Positions 14,655-59,271 are shown, counted from the stretch's first letter. The stretch: DNA of 64,000 bases from Vitrella brassicaformis CCMP3155 (GCA_001179505.1 CDMY01000802.1:1-64000), one strand, 5' to 3'. Notes: generated from the letters alone by a model not told the origin. Program-made: numbers and translations.

Positions 14655-16082
14655 TCACTGCTGCCCACTCAGATGCAACACTTCTATCTCGTCAGCCATG
14701 AAATCACTCGACCCAGCCAGATGAGCAGTGCCATATTCATTCCTCCTTCCCATGTAATCCTCAGGCACATGGTCGGTATGAGTGCACTGACAGCAGCTGC
14801 GGATGTCGGCAGCTGGCTGTTCATCCTCACCAGGACCGCTACAGCGGCCATCATACAAATACAGATGTCCCCCAATATACACTTTCGCATCGATGAGCAT
14901 ACACCCCTCCTCCCTCCCCGCCACCCGCACATTCTGCCAATCACGGCGAATCTCAATCTTTGTCGGCTTCTTGAAGTGGCCGGCCAGCGAGAACTGCCAT
15001 ACATCACACGGGTAGTAGTGCCAATCGGTGGGGTCATCGGGCTCCCAGATGCCGTCACTGATGAAGGCGCCGAACACATACATGTCCTTGCGTATGATAA
15101 ACACCAGGCCGGTCTTGTCGCCCACACAGCGGAGCAGATTGGCATATGTGGTGCCGTCTCGCGAGGACCTGACAGACACACAGACAGATGGATACATACA
15201 TATATATCACATCAGACTGCTGTATTACATGTGTGGGTGGCCTTGCCGACCTACCGATAGACAGAACGTAGCCGCTCGTCGCCTTCTATCAGGCCCAGCA
15301 GGCCGTAGTACTCCCACACGCCCAGAGAGCTGCCCACGGGCGGAGCCACCTGCACGACAGCACCAAGCACACCGCCTGCACAAATGAATCGCTGCTTGCG
15401 TGCGTGTCAGTGTGAGTGCGCACCAGTGGCTTGTGTAGCGAGGGAAACAACGATGCCCCCACACGCAGATCGCCAACACGCCCCTCCACACTACAGGCAA
15501 GCAATCCAGCAAACAATTCATAGAACAGATGGCTGCCTCTGCCGCTCTCTCTTGCTTTTTTACTTGGTGATTCTTGCCGAGTCTTGGTGCTTCCGAAGAG
15601 GCCTGAGCAGCCTGATCATGGCGTAATTCTTGAGGACGCTGGCAGCCGGGCTGACCACCCTGCACACACATTCACACAGACACATAGAGAGAGGCAGAAT
15701 GTGGACAGCGGGACATCTGCCTTGTCTTGCTGACCTGCACGTGGGGCACTCGGTGCTTCCATCGGCCTGCTTGATGACACTCACACACTGCAGGTGTTCA
15801 CACACACACAAACAAACAGACGGACAAACCATGAGTGCATTGTGCGGGATGGTTGTCTTGTGCTGCGCACTCACATCACTGCAGAGTGAATGGCCTGCAT
15901 GCATCGTATCAACACACACATCACAAACGAGGGGAAATGCATCGGATCCATCATCCTCCATGCACCTGCGAACCATATGTGTCGGTCGGCTCACCGCATC
16001 TGCCGAGTGTCATGGGCACGTGGCAGCCCTCAGCCTCCCACTTACAATAGCACACGTCACACACCATCTCCACTGACTCCAT
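14655..16082 (-). CDS. RING-HC (C3HC4) finger + TLDc domain gene (TLDc-1, no signal peptide); the fusion needs a 1-nt frameshift near 15603
   Basis: Spliced RING: MESVEMVCDVCYCKWEAEGCHVPMTLGRCG|HSLCSD|CVSVIKQADGSTECPTCR|VVSPAASVLKNYAMIRLL. TLDc exons: VAPPVGSSLG...LRSVYR|SSRDGTTY...LVFIIRKDMYVFGAFIS...WQFSLAGHF...FMADEIEVL. Confidence 0.7.
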
Positions 16083-16109
16083 CTTCGGACCATCGCTCCG
16101 TTCGAGCTT

Positions 16110-16334
16110 AGAGCACCTTTGCCATAAAGCCTTCAGGGGGAGGAGGTGGTGGAGCTGGTCAGGAAGGACAAGTACGTCTTCGGCGCCGTACACAACACAC
16201 ACACGTTGTCATCGATTGGTGTCTTCCTTACTGGGAGGGGACCACACACACAACTGATTGAGGTGGGGGGAGGGATGTATGATTCGAATGGCGTATATAT
16301 CTCTGTTCGCTCCATATGTGGGGCGAGTGTATGA
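16110..16334 (+). pseudogene. Degenerate TLDc fragment
   Basis: ELVRKDKYVFGAV matches the family motif VRKDKYVFGAF; the flanking sequence no longer aligns. Confidence 0.45.
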
Positions 16335-16882
16335 TTGATCGAATTAATGGCTAATACATAGGTTTGTCTGACTGACATGGATCAACGCCTGCTGGCGCGA
16401 CTGATTAGGTGTGCTGTGCTTGCTTTGTCGCCAGCAGCCAGCCTCACTCGTGTGTGGTGTCGGTGCGGATGTGCGTATGTGTGTGTACGACGAACGTTGG
16501 TGGGGGCGTTTGGTTTGTGAATTGCAGCTGGTGCAAGGCATCGGGTCAAGAAAATGTGCAGCTGTTGTCCCTCTGTTTATGAAGCCGCATGAACACCGCC
16601 ATCTACTTCATACACACAAACACAACAAGGCGAGGAGGCAAGCAGGCTTATCAGAAAAAAAGTAAACACACAGCGAACAAGTTAGTGTCATGCAGGCCAG
16701 GCCTAGTTCACCGACGCACACACATAATCACAGAAAGACATCAGGGCAGGACAACGACAATTGCAGACACACATGCAGACACAGCCATTCATTCAGTACA
16801 GTCAGTCCAGCCGCCACAGACACACACACTCACTGATTAACAAACAAACAGACAGACAAACAAACAAACAAATACCCACATT

Positions 16883-16903
16883 GGGGCACCAGCAGTGTGC
16901 CGG
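16883..16903 (-). repeat. Conserved 21-nt element downstream of TLDc genes, copy 1
   Basis: GGGGCACCAGCAGTGTGCCGG on +, about 120 nt past the TLDc-2 stop; identical to three other copies. Confidence 0.9.
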
Positions 16904-17021
16904 GAAACCACTCGACAGACAGAGAGGCAGACACGTAGAGAGAGGGCGGCAGATGTATCACTGCCTGCCTCTAGATGTACAGCAAGATAGAGGGAAAAGG
17001 CAAATCCGCCCCCCTCCTCCT

Positions 17022-17868
17022 CTACCCAATCACATGCAGCACCTCTATATCGTCGGCCATGAACTCCATCGACCCGCCCAGAAAGGCAGTGCCATTCTCA
17101 TTCTTCACTCCCGTGTAGCCCTCAGGCACATCACTGCCGGTAGTGTAGTGACGGCAGCTGCGGATGTCGGCAGCAGCAGACCGGCCATCGCCACCATAGC
17201 CCATGGCAAGTGAGAAACGTCCCCCGATCCACACTCTCGCACCATACACGGCCCCTCTCCTTTCCGCCACCCGCACGATCTGCCCCCCTCCGTAGAGGTT
17301 GATCTTGGTCGGCTGGGGGAAGTGGCCGGCCAGCGAGAAGAGCCACACATCACTCTCGTACTCGCGGCGGTCGGTGGGATAGTCGTCGGACAGCAAAAGG
17401 CGGTCACTGATGAAGGCGCCGAACACATAATTGTCCTTACGAATGATGAACACGAGAGGCTCCGCGTCACCCACACGGACAAGCACTTTGCGCCAGGCCG
17501 TCCCGTGTGCAGCCGTCCTACACACAACACACAAATGGAGAATCATCTGCCAGCCGACGGCACATCAGGGCATGATGTGTGTCTACCAGTAGAGTGGGGT
17601 GAGTTTTGTTGTGGCGTTGCCCAGCACCCCGAGCTCCCCCTCTTGGACCAGCAGGCCGACCAGCCCCTCATACTCCGACGCAGACAGCGAAGTGCCCTCG
17701 GGCGGGGTCACCTGCAGGCCACGCAAGTGGACCTGAACACACGAGTCAGCCAGCACACCAAAAGCATCAAATGGAGTGGATGGGTGCACCGCGTCCTTGT
17801 GTCCACACCTGTTGTGCCTCCGCCACGCAAAGAACCGTCAACAGACCAGCCACAGCCCGAATAAACAT
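17022..17868 (-). CDS. Signal-peptide TLDc protein (TLDc-2), 3 exons
   Basis: MFIRAVAGLLTVLCVAEAQQ|VHLRGLQVTPPEGTSLSASEYEG...NATTKLTPLYW|TAAHG...VFIIRKDNYVFGAFIS...WLFSLAGHF...DIRSC...FMADDIEVL. Confidence 0.88.
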
Positions 17869-17869
17869 C

Positions 17870-18050
17870 GCGATTGTGAACAACAAGGGAGAGGGGAAGA
17901 GAAGAGAGGAGAGATCCAAACTAGCTCACGATAAGACAGGATGTGACGAACGAGGCTCACACACCGATTGGGTCAGGTTCCCAAAAAGACCTATCCCGTG
18001 CAAGGACTGCGCTCTAACTCACTGCTTCCTGTGAGCTCGCATAGATCTGC
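17870..18050 (-). promoter_or_regulatory. Upstream region of TLDc-2, homologous to the upstream region of TLDc-3; shared divergently with the SCYL2-like gene
   Basis: The reverse complement aligns with 32270-32437, including GTGAGTTAGAGCGCAGTCCTTGCAC and TGACCCAATCG. Confidence 0.7.
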
Positions 18051-57617: not shown

Positions 57618-57848
57618 AAGGAGAACTATGAGTGGGTGTTGCGTGTCGCGGTCGCGTGTTGCGTGCACTTGGACAAAGGACACCACACAACAGGCCACGT
57701 CTTGCTACAAAGGGCCTGAGTATGCAAGTCAGGGGGCGAGACATGGGCAAAGTGAGACACACACAGACAATCGCACGTGCACACATAGGCATTCACCGCA
57801 CACAGACACACTGATCAACAAATAGACACACCAACACCCACACACACA

Positions 57849-57869
57849 GGGGCACCAGCAGTGTGCCGG
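57849..57869 (-). repeat. Conserved 21-nt element downstream of TLDc genes, copy 3
   Basis: GGGGCACCAGCAGTGTGCCGG on +. Confidence 0.9.
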
Positions 57870-58241
57870 CAAATCAGTTGCACTCAGCTGACAGACAGAC
57901 AGACAGACAGATAGAGGGCGGTTGGCTGTGTGTGGTGTTTTGTGGTAGGGCTTCCTCGGTGTCCGTGTGCTTTTCCTCGGCCATTTGGCACAGACAGCCT
58001 TTCGCGACGCACGGCATTTGATTTGAACTGAAATCCCTGAGTGTTCACTCGTTCGTCTGCCTGTCGAGCCACATAGACACTCACTGTCATCCCTCAACAA
58101 ACATAACCACGCCGAGGCAAACAGACAGACAGGCTTATCAGAAAGAAGAAATTCGCAGGCCCACTTCGCGCACTTATCACAAAAAGACCTCAGGGCAGGA
58201 TATGACAACACGCCCCAAAATACCGCACATACACACAGACG

Positions 58242-58262
58242 GGGGCACCAGCAGTGTGCCGG
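58242..58262 (-). repeat. Conserved 21-nt element downstream of TLDc genes, copy 4
   Basis: GGGGCACCAGCAGTGTGCCGG on +, about 147 nt past the TLDc-8 stop. Confidence 0.9.
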
Positions 58263-58408
58263 CAAAGCACTCGACTTAGATAACAACAGACAGACAGACA
58301 GACAGGCACAGAGGACGGCAGATGTATCACTGCCTCTCTCTGTGGACAGAACCATAGGGAGAGGGAAAGGGCACATCCCCTCTCTCCCTCCCTCTCTCCC
58401 TCCATCCC

Positions 58409-58895
58409 TCACTGCACCACCTGCAGCACTTCAATCTCGTCAGCCATAAACTCGTACGACCCACCCAAGAAAGCATCGCCATCCAACTGAAATCTCTTAC
58501 CCATGTAGCCCGCAGGCACATACTTGCTGGGAGTGAACTGACTGCAGATGCGGATGTCGGTTGGTATACCCAGCGACAGAGCCCCACCAGACCACCCTTG
58601 CCCGCCGATCCACAAATCCTCATCTATCGTCCCCACCCTCCCCGGCTCCCTCACATACTGACTCACAGAGATCTTGATCGGCTTGGGGAAGTGGCCGGCC
58701 AGTGAGAGCTGGCCAGTGAGAACCCACATCACTGTCGTAAACGTGACTGCTGGTCGGGTCGTCGGGCAGCTGGATGCCTTCACTGATGAAGGCACCGAAC
58801 ACATACTTGTCCTTCCTGACCACAAACACGAGAGGTTTTGTGTCTCCCACATTGTCCAGCAGGTCGCCGTAGGTGGTGCCATGCACAGACGTCCT

Positions 58896-58928
<33 letters not shown>

Positions 58929-59271
58929 CACAGACGGACACATGATCCATCCCAGCACTGTTGGCATGATGTGTGTCTACCGGTAGAGTGAGATGAGTCG
59001 TGTGGCGCCATTGCCCCCCAGTAGGCCGAGCAGCCCCTCATACTCAGACGCAGACAGCGATGTGCCGTTGGGCGGGGTCACCTGCAGGCCACGCAAACGG
59101 ACCTGAACACACCAGGCAGCCATGCACATCACAGCATCAAATAAGTGAGTGAGTGATGGCGTGTGGGCACGAGTAGTGTGGGCATACCTGTTCTGCGTGT
59201 CTTGTCTCCGTTTGACCACAGGCTGACGCCACACAGAGAAGCACCAAAACCGCAGTACACCGATTCAACAT
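58409..59271 (-). pseudogene. Signal-peptide TLDc gene (TLDc-8) with a frameshift at ~58697-58727
   Basis: MLNRCTAVLVLLCVASACGQTETRHAEQ|VRLRGLQ...LYR|TSVHG...YDSDV, then a net +10 nt change with duplicated GGCCAGTGAGA. The downstream frame resumes SLAGHFPKP...FMADEIEVLQVVQ*. Confidence 0.78.

What the first reader, a model, noticed from the sequence alone, without database searches (positions are those of the whole stretch)
14655..59271. Expanded family of TLDc proteins, mostly predicted to be secreted
Seen: 8 genes with 9 complete TLDc domains in 45 kb. Six (TLDc-2, 3, 5, 6, 7, 8) start with a hydrophobic signal-peptide exon and carry N-glycosylation sequons in the next TLDc exon (NGT, NDT or NAT; TLDc-8 has PNGTS). 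The two without a signal peptide (TLDc-1, 4; SSRDG/GDKTGLV subtype) lack these sequons at that position. All keep a Cys in the DIRSC motif. Established: characterised TLDc proteins (OXR1, NCOA7, TBC1D24, MEAK7, yeast Oxr1/Rtc5) are cytosolic, bind the V-ATPase and are linked to oxidative-stress resistance. Inference: this lineage moved TLDc into the secretory pathway or outside the cell and diversified it, perhaps as a surface, wall or defence family. I know of no description of such a system but cannot search.
Basis: partly seen in the sequence, partly recalled or inferred. Interest (0 to 1): 0.88.

Follow-up and report, generated by a model that had tools for sequence, protein, structure and literature searches.

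The report
Secretory TLDc gene cluster in Vitrella
The coral-associated alga Vitrella brassicaformis has multiplied the TLDc domain, known elsewhere only as an intracellular partner of the proton pump V-ATPase. In this 45-kb cluster six of eight copies carry a spliced-on secretion signal and sugar-attachment sites, so they most likely work in the secretory pathway or on the cell surface, a setting no paper I could find describes.

Summary
The window is the first 64 kb of Vitrella brassicaformis CCMP3155 contig CDMY01000802.1. It carries exactly nine TLDc domain copies in eight annotated genes.

- **TLDc identity:** Pfam PF07534 matches, and an AlphaFold model (pLDDT 89) has only TLDc structures as its top 16 PDB matches.
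- **Signal peptides:** Six genes start with a short exon encoding a typical cleavable signal peptide. Spliced RNA contigs join that exon to the TLDc exons for four of the six (T2, T5, T7, T8).
- **Other secretory marks:** The signal-bearing subtype has N-x-S/T sequons at two aligned sites (15 of 16 against 0 of 8). Some members add a Thr/Pro stalk with a GPI-type tail (T3) or an LNR module.
- **Caveats:** T8's domain is frameshifted in the assembly. T5 carries a ~110-nt in-frame insert. The intron joining T7's two domains is not shown by RNA. No SignalP run or protein-level data were available.
- **Assembly gap:** The gap at 45416-45715 lies more than 4 kb from any TLDc exon.
- **Family range:** The subfamily looks Vitrella-specific, with at least 90 clusters. 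Most of it is intracellular (RING, Tc5-HTH and NYN fusions), and the secretory type is mostly one nested branch.
- **Novelty:** No paper describes it. Uncharacterised cnidarian EGF-TLDc architectures exist in databases. The scan has noted a secretory TLDc gene elsewhere in this genome (s1-252817).

Function is inferred, not shown.

The parts
14655..16067 (-). T1: RING (C3HC4) + TLDc, 305 aa, with no signal peptide and no sequons. It is the intracellular subtype (SSRDG/GDKTGLV).
   Evidence: P0023 maps at 100% identity. The gene is annotated. The transcript contig L004 is spliced exactly as the model.
17022..17868 (-). T2: signal-peptide exon (17868-17809), exon 2 (17732-17587) and large TLDc exon (17517-17022); 233 aa. 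It is a diverged copy (YWTAAHG in place of YRTSVHG).
   Evidence: My model is identical to the ORF of the intron-less JGI transcript contig L004. Pfam TLD E 5e-5 on the large exon.
32438..33493 (+). T3: signal-peptide exon (32438-32497), exon 2 (32562-32686) and exon 3 (32749-33493); 309 aa. The protein is TLDc, then a Thr/Pro-rich stalk, then a C-terminal hydrophobic tail of GPI-signal type.
   Evidence: The model equals P0027. AF2 model pLDDT 89.1, pTM 0.87. Its top 16 PDB matches are all TLDc domains. C-terminal tail hydropathy 2.42.
37026..37794 (-). T4: bare TLDc protein, 201 aa, with no signal peptide and no exon-2 sequons. It has 8 Cys in the domain.
   Evidence: P0033. Pfam TLD E 1.2e-7. 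It groups with intracellular members in the tree.
38366..39304 (-). T5: signal-peptide exon (39304-39233), exon 2 (39148-39030) and a large exon carrying a ~110-nt in-frame insert; 264 aa.
   Evidence: Transcript contig L005 shows exon 1 spliced to exon 2. Annotated as 264 aa.
40396..41264 (-). T6: signal-peptide exon (41264-41190), exon 2 (41105-40987) and exon 3 (40885-40396); 227 aa.
   Evidence: Its exon 3 and 3' UTR are present in transcript contig L005. Splicing of its own signal exon is inferred from the 97%-identical T5.
53929..56131 (-). T7: eight exons. The protein is a signal peptide, an orphan ~145-aa domain with two sequons, then TLDc domain a (55371-54690) and TLDc domain b (54632-53929); 573 aa, or 566 aa as annotated.
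   Evidence: Introns 1-4 appear as GT..AG joints in the RNA contig of run X8. Model. P0045: Pfam TLD 2e-20 with two stretches. The 57-nt intron at 54633-54689 between the two domains is not shown by RNA.
58409..59271 (-). T8: signal-peptide exon (59271-59186), exon 2 and a TLDc exon whose reading frame shifts at about 58711-58725. It is transcribed but probably a broken or truncated copy.
   Evidence: The joint 59100/59186 is seen in RNA run X1. The frame change is seen. There are two conflicting database models, P0036 and P0039.
45416..45715 (.). Assembly gap (N run). It is not part of any TLDc gene.
   Evidence: The nearest TLDc exons are at 41264 and 53929, and no TLDc-like segment lies between them.
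34209..36268 (.). One arm of an inverted segmental duplication; the other arm is 51802-53670, at 88-92% identity. Each arm carries a Methyltransf_15 gene beside a TLDc gene (T3, T7), which shows how the array grew.
   Evidence: Self-blastn. Annotation.

Best explanation
This is a tandem array made by local duplication. It belongs to a fast-evolving TLDc subfamily that looks specific to Vitrella.

**The two types.** The ancestral, larger part of the subfamily is intracellular: RING-TLDc such as T1, bare TLDc such as T4, and elsewhere Tc5-HTH and NYN fusions. One nested branch gained a separate 5' exon that encodes a cleavable ER signal peptide. Six genes here (T2, T3, T5, T6, T7, T8) belong to that branch.

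**How the secretory type is made (inferred).** The products are translocated into the ER. The signal is cut about 10-12 residues before the TLDc fold begins. The N-terminal edge of the domain is N-glycosylated. The proteins are then secreted or displayed on the surface. T3 sits on a mucin-like stalk with a GPI-type anchor signal. T7 is a two-domain protein with an extra orphan domain.

**Function (inferred).** On the lumenal or extracellular side of the membrane these proteins cannot reach the cytosolic V1 sector of V-ATPase. The conserved TLDc beta-sandwich is therefore most likely used as a diversifying binding module.

**What is shown and what is inferred.** Shown: the domains, the fold, the gene structure, the splicing of the signal exon, the sequon pattern and the family's range. 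Inferred: cleavage, glycosylation, anchoring, location and the binding role.
For: **TLDc identity**
- Pfam matches.
- Profile against PDB sequences, E 2e-5 to 1e-2, TLDc chains only.
- AF2 model pLDDT 89; top 16 Foldseek PDB matches are all TLDc at probability 0.99-1.00.

**Signal peptides**
- h-regions of 12-15 residues, followed by A/V/T-x-A/G, within the first 18-20 residues of all six.
- The exon is homologous among paralogues.

**RNA**
- T2: exact spliced ORF in L004.
- T5: exons 1-2 joined in L005.
- T7: introns 1-4, and T8: intron 1.
- A paralogue's MMETSP transcript ORF, marked complete, starts with the same kind of signal (P0014).

**Sequons:** 15 of 16 signal-type against 0 of 8 signal-less members have N-x-S/T at two aligned sites (Fisher 1.2e-5).

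**No transit peptide:** the confident fold begins about 12 residues after the predicted cleavage site.

**Extracellular partners**
- GPI-type tails on P0027, P0015, P0030, P0035 and P0064.
- SP+LNR+TLDc in P0089.

**Expansion**
- 267 hits in 1.84 billion representatives, 94 of them at E<1e-30.
- All 16 clusters that carried a source name, out of 20 clusters looked up, are Vitrella.

**Evolution**
- The signal type is mostly one nested branch.
- Pairwise dN/dS is 0.43-0.94 while the core motifs are conserved.
- Duplication blocks and 5' gene conversion are visible.
Against: - No dedicated predictor (SignalP, PredGPI, ASAFind) could be run, so the signal-peptide call rests on a hydropathy and -3/-1 heuristic.
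- There is no proteomic, glycosylation or localisation evidence.
- The signal-type domains carry 1-4 Cys, often an odd number, and the invariant Cys has no conserved partner. This is unusual for extracellular domains.
- The scaffold residues whose mutation abolishes (G815A, G845A) or reduces (E938A) NCOA7 binding to V-ATPase are retained, as far as they can be mapped (PMC8608904). A V-ATPase-type interaction is therefore not excluded by sequence.
- T8 is frameshifted, T5 carries an insert and dN/dS is high, so some copies may be decaying.
- The sequon contrast is between two branches of the tree and is not phylogenetically independent.
- The tree has weak support and no root.
Confidence: 0.72

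Rival explanations
1. The hydrophobic N-terminus is an uncleaved reverse signal anchor. It would tether the TLDc domain on the cytosolic face of an organelle membrane, where the domain could still regulate V-ATPase as known TLDc proteins do.
For: Every characterised TLDc protein binds the cytosolic V1 sector (PDB complexes; PMC8608904). The mappable residues important for NCOA7 binding are conserved here. The signal-type domains have few Cys, often an odd number.
Against: The h-regions are only 12-15 residues, too short for a membrane span, and are followed by small residues at -3 and -1. Sequons are enriched directly after them. Members have C-terminal GPI-type tails, Thr/Pro stalks and an LNR module, which only make sense on the lumenal or extracellular side.
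Confidence: 0.07
2. The signal peptide is the first half of a bipartite leader. The proteins would pass through the ER to the complex plastid rather than to the surface.
For: Vitrella has a secondary plastid whose nuclear-encoded proteins enter through the ER (established knowledge; prediction scheme described in PMC4501334).
Against: Only about 10-12 residues separate the predicted cleavage site from the confidently folded domain, which leaves no room for a transit peptide. The residue after the cut is Q or R, not aromatic. GPI-type tails and mucin-like stalks do not fit plastid proteins.
Confidence: 0.04
3. The array is mostly evolutionary debris. On this view the copies are recently duplicated, drifting and transcribed but have no maintained function, so the secretory features are inherited from one functional ancestor.
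For: T8 is frameshifted and T5 has a 110-nt insert. T2 has lost the conserved R-[ST]-x-[HD]-G motif. Pairwise dN/dS is 0.43-0.94, and 0.94 between the two T7 domains. Tc5 transposase HTH domains are fused to eight relatives.
Against: Seven of the eight genes keep open frames. Core motifs and the invariant Cys are kept across members that are 43-63% identical to T3. The signal exons keep their hydrophobic design while their sequences diverge. The sequons are maintained at two sites. Transcripts are spliced correctly.
Confidence: 0.12

Closest known systems
Characterised TLDc proteins: OXR1, NCOA7, TLDC2, mEAK7/TLDC1, TBC1D24/Skywalker, yeast Oxr1p and Rtc5p
   Same: They share the Pfam family (PF07534) and the fold. 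All 16 top PDB matches are these proteins. The scaffold residues equivalent to NCOA7 G815, G845 and E938 are kept (PMC8608904).
   Different: The known proteins have no signal peptide and act on the cytosolic V1 sector of V-ATPase. Six genes here have a cleavable-type signal peptide, sequons and in part GPI-type tails. Sequence similarity is weak (14-17% identity, TM by query 0.4-0.54). The domain is about 40-60 residues longer and carries its own DIRSC motif with an invariant Cys.
Predicted cnidarian EGF/Sushi-TLDc and fn3-TLDc proteins (database entries only, uncharacterised)
   Same: TLDc is combined with modules typical of extracellular proteins (Atlas clusters; AFDB entries named Sushi/vWA/EGF/pentraxin and HEG homolog). 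After Vitrella's own proteins these are among the nearest fold clusters.
   Different: They are metazoan multi-module proteins with about 15-20% identity. They have no shared signal exon, no DIRSC motif and no tandem expansion of small SP-TLDc genes. I found no paper on them either.
Intracellular members of the same Vitrella TLDc expansion
   Same: They belong to the same subfamily profile, share the same exon split of the domain and keep the same invariant Cys. T1 and T4 in this cluster are of this type.
   Different: They have no signal peptide, no sequons at the two sites and more Cys. Their partner domains point to the cytosol or nucleus.

Membership tests
TLDc domain (Pfam PF07534) | Sequence match to the family model above its gathering score (24.5 bits) | tested here: met
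   The spliced T7 protein scores 73.9 bits (E 2e-20) with two stretches. Of the nine large exons scanned alone, five are above and three just below the cut-off, and T8's is missed because of its frameshift. 79 of 87 relatives match.
TLDc domain (Pfam PF07534) | TLDc fold | tested here: met
   AF2 model of T3 residues 19-245: pLDDT 89.1, pTM 0.87. Foldseek PDB ranks 1-16 are all TLDc domains at probability 0.99-1.00, with TM by target 0.23-0.71.
TLDc domain (Pfam PF07534) | Conserved scaffold residues needed for NCOA7 to bind V-ATPase (G815, S817, G845, G896, L926, E938; PMC8608904) | tested here: inconclusive
   Three residues can be mapped through the profile alignment to 7OBP/4ACJ: G of HG/DG, G of FG and E of EVL. 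These are kept in all nine copies. S817 is T or S. G896 and L926 lie in the part that does not align by sequence.
V-ATPase-regulating TLDc proteins (OXR1/NCOA7/mEAK7 type) | Cytosolic location and physical binding to the V1 sector | tested here: not met
   By sequence only: six of the eight genes carry cleavable-type signal peptides, sequons and, in T3, a GPI-type tail. This predicts the opposite side of the membrane. Binding itself cannot be tested with these tools. T1 and T4 may still meet this feature.
Classical secretory proteins (cleavable N-terminal signal peptide) | Tripartite n/h/c signal within the first ~25 residues, with small residues at -3 and -1 | tested here: met
   Heuristic and direct reading only; SignalP was not available. 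The h-regions are 12-15 residues, and the cut sites read AEA|Q, VEG|Q, AAG|R, AAG|R, TEA|R and ACG|Q.
Classical secretory proteins (cleavable N-terminal signal peptide) | The signal-encoding exon is part of the mature mRNA | tested here: met
   Shown for T2, T5, and T7 and T8. Not shown directly for T3 and T6.
Classical secretory proteins (cleavable N-terminal signal peptide) | Protein detected outside the cytosol, glycosylated or cleaved | not testable with these tools
   No proteomic or localisation data were available. The sequon enrichment (15/16 against 0/8) is indirect evidence.
GPI-anchored mucin-type surface protein (T3 only) | Signal peptide, Ser/Thr/Pro-rich spacer, and a C-terminal hydrophobic tail ending the protein after small omega-type residues | tested here: met
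   Direct reading of P0027: a Thr/Pro-rich stretch of ~55 residues, then small residues, then a 13-residue hydrophobic end. Tail hydropathy is 2.42. No GPI predictor was run.
RING E3 ligase fused to TLDc (T1 only) | C3HC4 RING finger N-terminal to the TLDc domain | tested here: met
   The Cys/His pattern can be read in P0023 residues 3-49. A source names it 'RING-type domain-containing protein'. RING Pfam families hit 7 relatives.

The most novel reading that the evidence does not exclude
TLDc is the variable recognition domain of a two-compartment repertoire in this coral-associated alga. One arm would be extracellular (signal peptide, GPI stalk, LNR). The other would be intracellular (RING, BTB, NYN, Tc5-HTH). 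Both would diversify quickly on a constant scaffold with an invariant, possibly reactive Cys. That would make it a self/non-self, symbiosis or defence recognition system built on a fold so far known only as a V-ATPase regulator.
Probability: 0.15. Interest if true: 0.85.

Novelty: new variant of a known kind. Interest (0 to 1): 0.6.

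Why it matters
The biochemical role of the TLDc domain is still debated, and every studied member acts in the cytosol on V-ATPase. A large, expressed, natural set of TLDc domains placed behind signal peptides would show that the fold has a V-ATPase-independent use. 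It would also supply matched intracellular and extracellular paralogues for asking what TLDc binds and what its invariant Cys does. In addition, it identifies an undescribed lineage-specific surface or secreted protein family in a close photosynthetic relative of apicomplexan parasites that lives with corals.

Tried and rejected
- **Single-sequence AlphaFold of T3.** It failed (pLDDT 38). An 81-row family alignment was needed.
- **T8 3' intron.** I first read an RNA contig as a 3' intron after T8's stop codon. The contig has the same 138 letters there, merely unaligned, so there is no intron.
- **T7 second domain.** RNA support for the 57-nt intron joining the two domains was sought and not found. 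The paralogous repeats break the contigs.
- **T7 N-terminal domain.** The ~145-aa domain found nothing in Pfam or the ESM Atlas.
- **Relatives in Chromera or apicomplexans.** Every named member in the 20 clusters looked up is Vitrella. Unnamed metagenome and Logan hits could not be assigned.
- **Literature.** TLDc combined with Vitrella, signal peptide, secreted or coral, plus the chromerid genome paper and its supplements, gave no description of the family. Two broad OR-type searches were uninformative.
- **Position of the Cys and sequons on the model.** Model coordinates are not exposed, so burial of the invariant Cys and surface mapping of the sequons could not be computed.

Full report
**1. 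Source and the assembly gap**

Database proteins map at 100% identity onto the window. The loci fetched around them show that the window is positions 1-64000 of contig CDMY01000802.1 of Vitrella brassicaformis CCMP3155 (GCA_001179505.1), with window coordinates equal to record coordinates.

The N run at 45416-45715 lies between T6 (starts at 41264) and T7 (ends at 53929). Neither a paralogue BLAST nor a family-profile scan of all six frames finds any TLDc-like segment between them. The gap therefore affects no TLDc model. Continuity across it was not tested, so eight genes is a lower bound.

**2. The observation**

Nine large exons are mutual paralogues. Eight hit Pfam PF07534 by themselves, from profile position ~35 onward. 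The missing N-terminal part of the domain lies in a conserved short upstream exon.

A profile built from 81 family domains finds exactly nine two-exon TLDc copies in the window and nothing else.

All eight genes are annotated in the public record, with product lengths 305, 233, 309, 201, 264, 227, 566 and 206 aa. My independent spliced models reproduce T2, T3 and T7 exactly, and T5 and T6 up to the choice of donor site.

- Six genes have a hydrophobic first exon.
- The next exon carries sequons (PPNGT-type and GN[DAG]T-type).
- T1 and T4 have neither feature.
- The Cys of the DIRSC motif is invariant in 25 aligned members and at least 90% conserved in 81.

Corrections:
- T8 changes reading frame inside the domain at about 58711-58725. 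There the sequence shows a short tandem duplication with a net excess of 10 nt relative to its paralogues. Two conflicting database models exist (P0036, P0039), and the longer one skips core strands.
- T5 has a ~110-nt in-frame insert relative to T6.
- T1 is a RING-TLDc fusion.

**3. Is it TLDc?**

Yes, but a divergent kind.
- The family profile reaches solved TLDc chains only at E 2e-5 to 1e-2.
- A single-sequence fold failed. With the family alignment the T3 domain folds at pLDDT 89.1 and pTM 0.87.
- The 16 best PDB matches are all TLDc domains at probability 0.99-1.00: Skywalker, zebrafish OXR2, NCOA7, mEAK7, yeast Oxr1 and Rtc5. Several of these structures are complexes with V-ATPase.
- Sequence identity to them is 14-17%, and the domain is about 40-60 residues longer.

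**4. Are the signal exons real and used?**

Each first exon encodes a short positively charged start, an uninterrupted hydrophobic run of 12-15 residues, and small residues at -3 and -1. The exon ends just after that point. The exon is homologous among paralogues (T2 with T3; T5 with T6).

| Gene | RNA evidence for splicing of the signal exon |
|---|---|
| T2 | JGI transcript contig L004 contains the spliced ORF, letter for letter |
| T5 | Contig L005 joins exon 1 to exon 2 |
| T7 | A contig of run X8 carries introns 1-4 removed, with GT..AG ends |
| T8 | A contig of run X1 joins 59186 to 59100 |

Runs X3 and X4 read through the introns and behave as DNA. A paralogue elsewhere in the genome has an MMETSP transcript ORF, marked complete, with the same kind of N-terminus (P0014).

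SignalP could not be run, so the signal-peptide call is a heuristic one.

**5. Other marks of the secretory pathway**

- **Sequons.** At two aligned sites of exon 2, 15 of 16 signal-type members have N-x-S/T against 0 of 8 signal-less members (Fisher 1.2e-5). Whole-domain sequon counts also differ. The two classes are branches of one tree, so this is not an independent-contrast test.
- **C-terminal anchors.** T3 continues after the domain into a Thr/Pro-rich stretch of ~55 residues and ends in a 13-residue hydrophobic tail, the layout of a GPI signal. P0015, P0030, P0035 and P0064 end similarly.
- **LNR modules.** Two relatives combine TLDc with an LNR (Notch) module, and one of them has a signal peptide.
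- **No transit peptide.** The confident fold starts about 12 residues after the predicted cleavage site, which leaves no room for a plastid transit peptide.
- **Not a membrane anchor.** The h-regions are too short for a membrane span, which argues against a cytosol-facing signal anchor.

**6. The family**

A profile search of 1.84 billion representatives returns only 267 hits, 94 of them at E<1e-30. Twenty clusters were looked up across the score range. The 16 that carried a source name are all Vitrella; four had no name.

Partner domains among 87 relatives are Tc5-transposase HTH (8), RING (7), LNR (2), NYN (2), and CBM20, AP2 and others once each.

In a quick maximum-likelihood tree the signal-type members fall mostly into one nested group of 24 rows. 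That group lies inside a larger intracellular radiation, and T1 and T4 sit in neighbouring groups. Support is modest and the tree is unrooted.

The simplest history is one main gain of a signal exon followed by local duplication. The window shows that process:
- an inverted 2-kb duplication that pairs T3 and T7, each with a Methyltransf_15 gene;
- a 97%-identical 5' segment shared by T5 and T6 against ~75% identity in exon 3;
- an intron upstream of T7's second domain that resembles intron 1 of the single-domain genes.

Pairwise Nei-Gojobori dN/dS on exon 3 is 0.43-0.94, so protein evolution is fast around a conserved core.

**7. How it most likely works**

Shown:
- the domain identity and fold;
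- the gene structure and the splicing of the signal exon;
- the sequon pattern;
- the family's range.

Inferred:
- co-translational entry into the ER and cleavage of the signal;
- N-glycosylation at the N-terminal edge of the domain;
- secretion or surface display, by GPI anchor for T3.

On that side of the membrane the proteins cannot meet the V1 sector that all studied TLDc proteins bind (PMC8608904). I therefore take the fold to be reused as a diversifying binding module.

One point cuts the other way. The three mappable residues that matter for NCOA7 binding to V-ATPase (mutating G815 or G845 abolishes it, mutating E938 reduces it) are kept in all nine copies (PMC8608904). In that paper these mutations were also predicted to affect folding stability, so their retention says little about the binding partner.

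The invariant Cys has no conserved partner Cys, and signal-type domains often have an odd Cys count. This remains unexplained.

**8. Comparison and novelty**

The closest characterised relatives are OXR1, NCOA7, TLDC2, mEAK7, TBC1D24 and yeast Oxr1p/Rtc5p. They share the fold but differ in topology and context.

Databases also hold uncharacterised cnidarian EGF/Sushi-TLDc and fn3-TLDc proteins. An extracellular setting for TLDc is therefore not unique to Vitrella, only undescribed.

No paper in the searched library links TLDc with Vitrella, signal peptides, secretion or corals. The chromerid genome paper and its held supplements do not mention TLD.

Within this scan, other notes on the same genome report a secretory TLDc gene and several intracellular TLDc fusions. 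They agree with this reading but are not independent evidence.

I rate the finding a new variant of a known kind, with interest 0.6.

Noticed in passing
window 39097-39276 and 41060-41243: The end of the signal exon, intron 1 and the start of exon 2 of T5 and T6 are 97% identical in DNA, while their exon 3 is about 75% identical and their upstream regions are lower. This looks like recent gene conversion confined to the 5' part.
   Followed up: partly
L004 (maps to window 14466-17984) and L005 (maps to 39029-39481 and 39515-40886): Transcriptome contigs join neighbouring genes. L004 holds spliced T2, an unspliced spacer and spliced T1 on one contig. L005 holds T5 exons 1-2 joined to T6 exon 3 plus the T6 3' UTR, reaching to within 34 nt of the start of T5's 5' UTR. 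These could be read-through transcription, assembler chimeras through the shared repeat, or both.
   Followed up: partly
window 34209-36268 and 51802-53670: An inverted segmental duplication (88-92% identity). Each arm carries a Methyltransf_15 (PF09445) gene, one of 298 aa and one shorter at 171 aa, next to a TLDc gene.
   Followed up: partly
window 55434-56061 (T7 exons 1-4): The ~145-residue region between T7's signal peptide and its first TLDc domain has two sequons. It has no relative in Pfam or the ESM Atlas, so it is an orphan, presumably extracellular module.
   Followed up: partly
window 58700-58730: A short tandem duplication (TCTCACTGGCC twice) sits at the point where T8 changes reading frame. 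The public annotation hides it inside a 70-nt intron that removes the conserved FSLAGHF/PTKI strands.
   Followed up: partly
window 11034-13771, 18359-23211, 23512-26910: The neighbouring annotated genes are unrelated to TLDc: a glycoside hydrolase family 1 gene, a protein kinase of 828 aa and dynactin p62. The TLDc genes are interspersed among ordinary genes rather than forming an uninterrupted array.
   Followed up: no
AFDB fold clusters: After Vitrella's own proteins, the nearest fold clusters to the T3 domain are coral and sea-anemone TLDc proteins, some named Sushi/vWA/EGF/pentraxin or HEG-like. Vitrella was isolated from corals. I did not test whether this is more than shared divergence from the canonical TLDc.
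   Followed up: no
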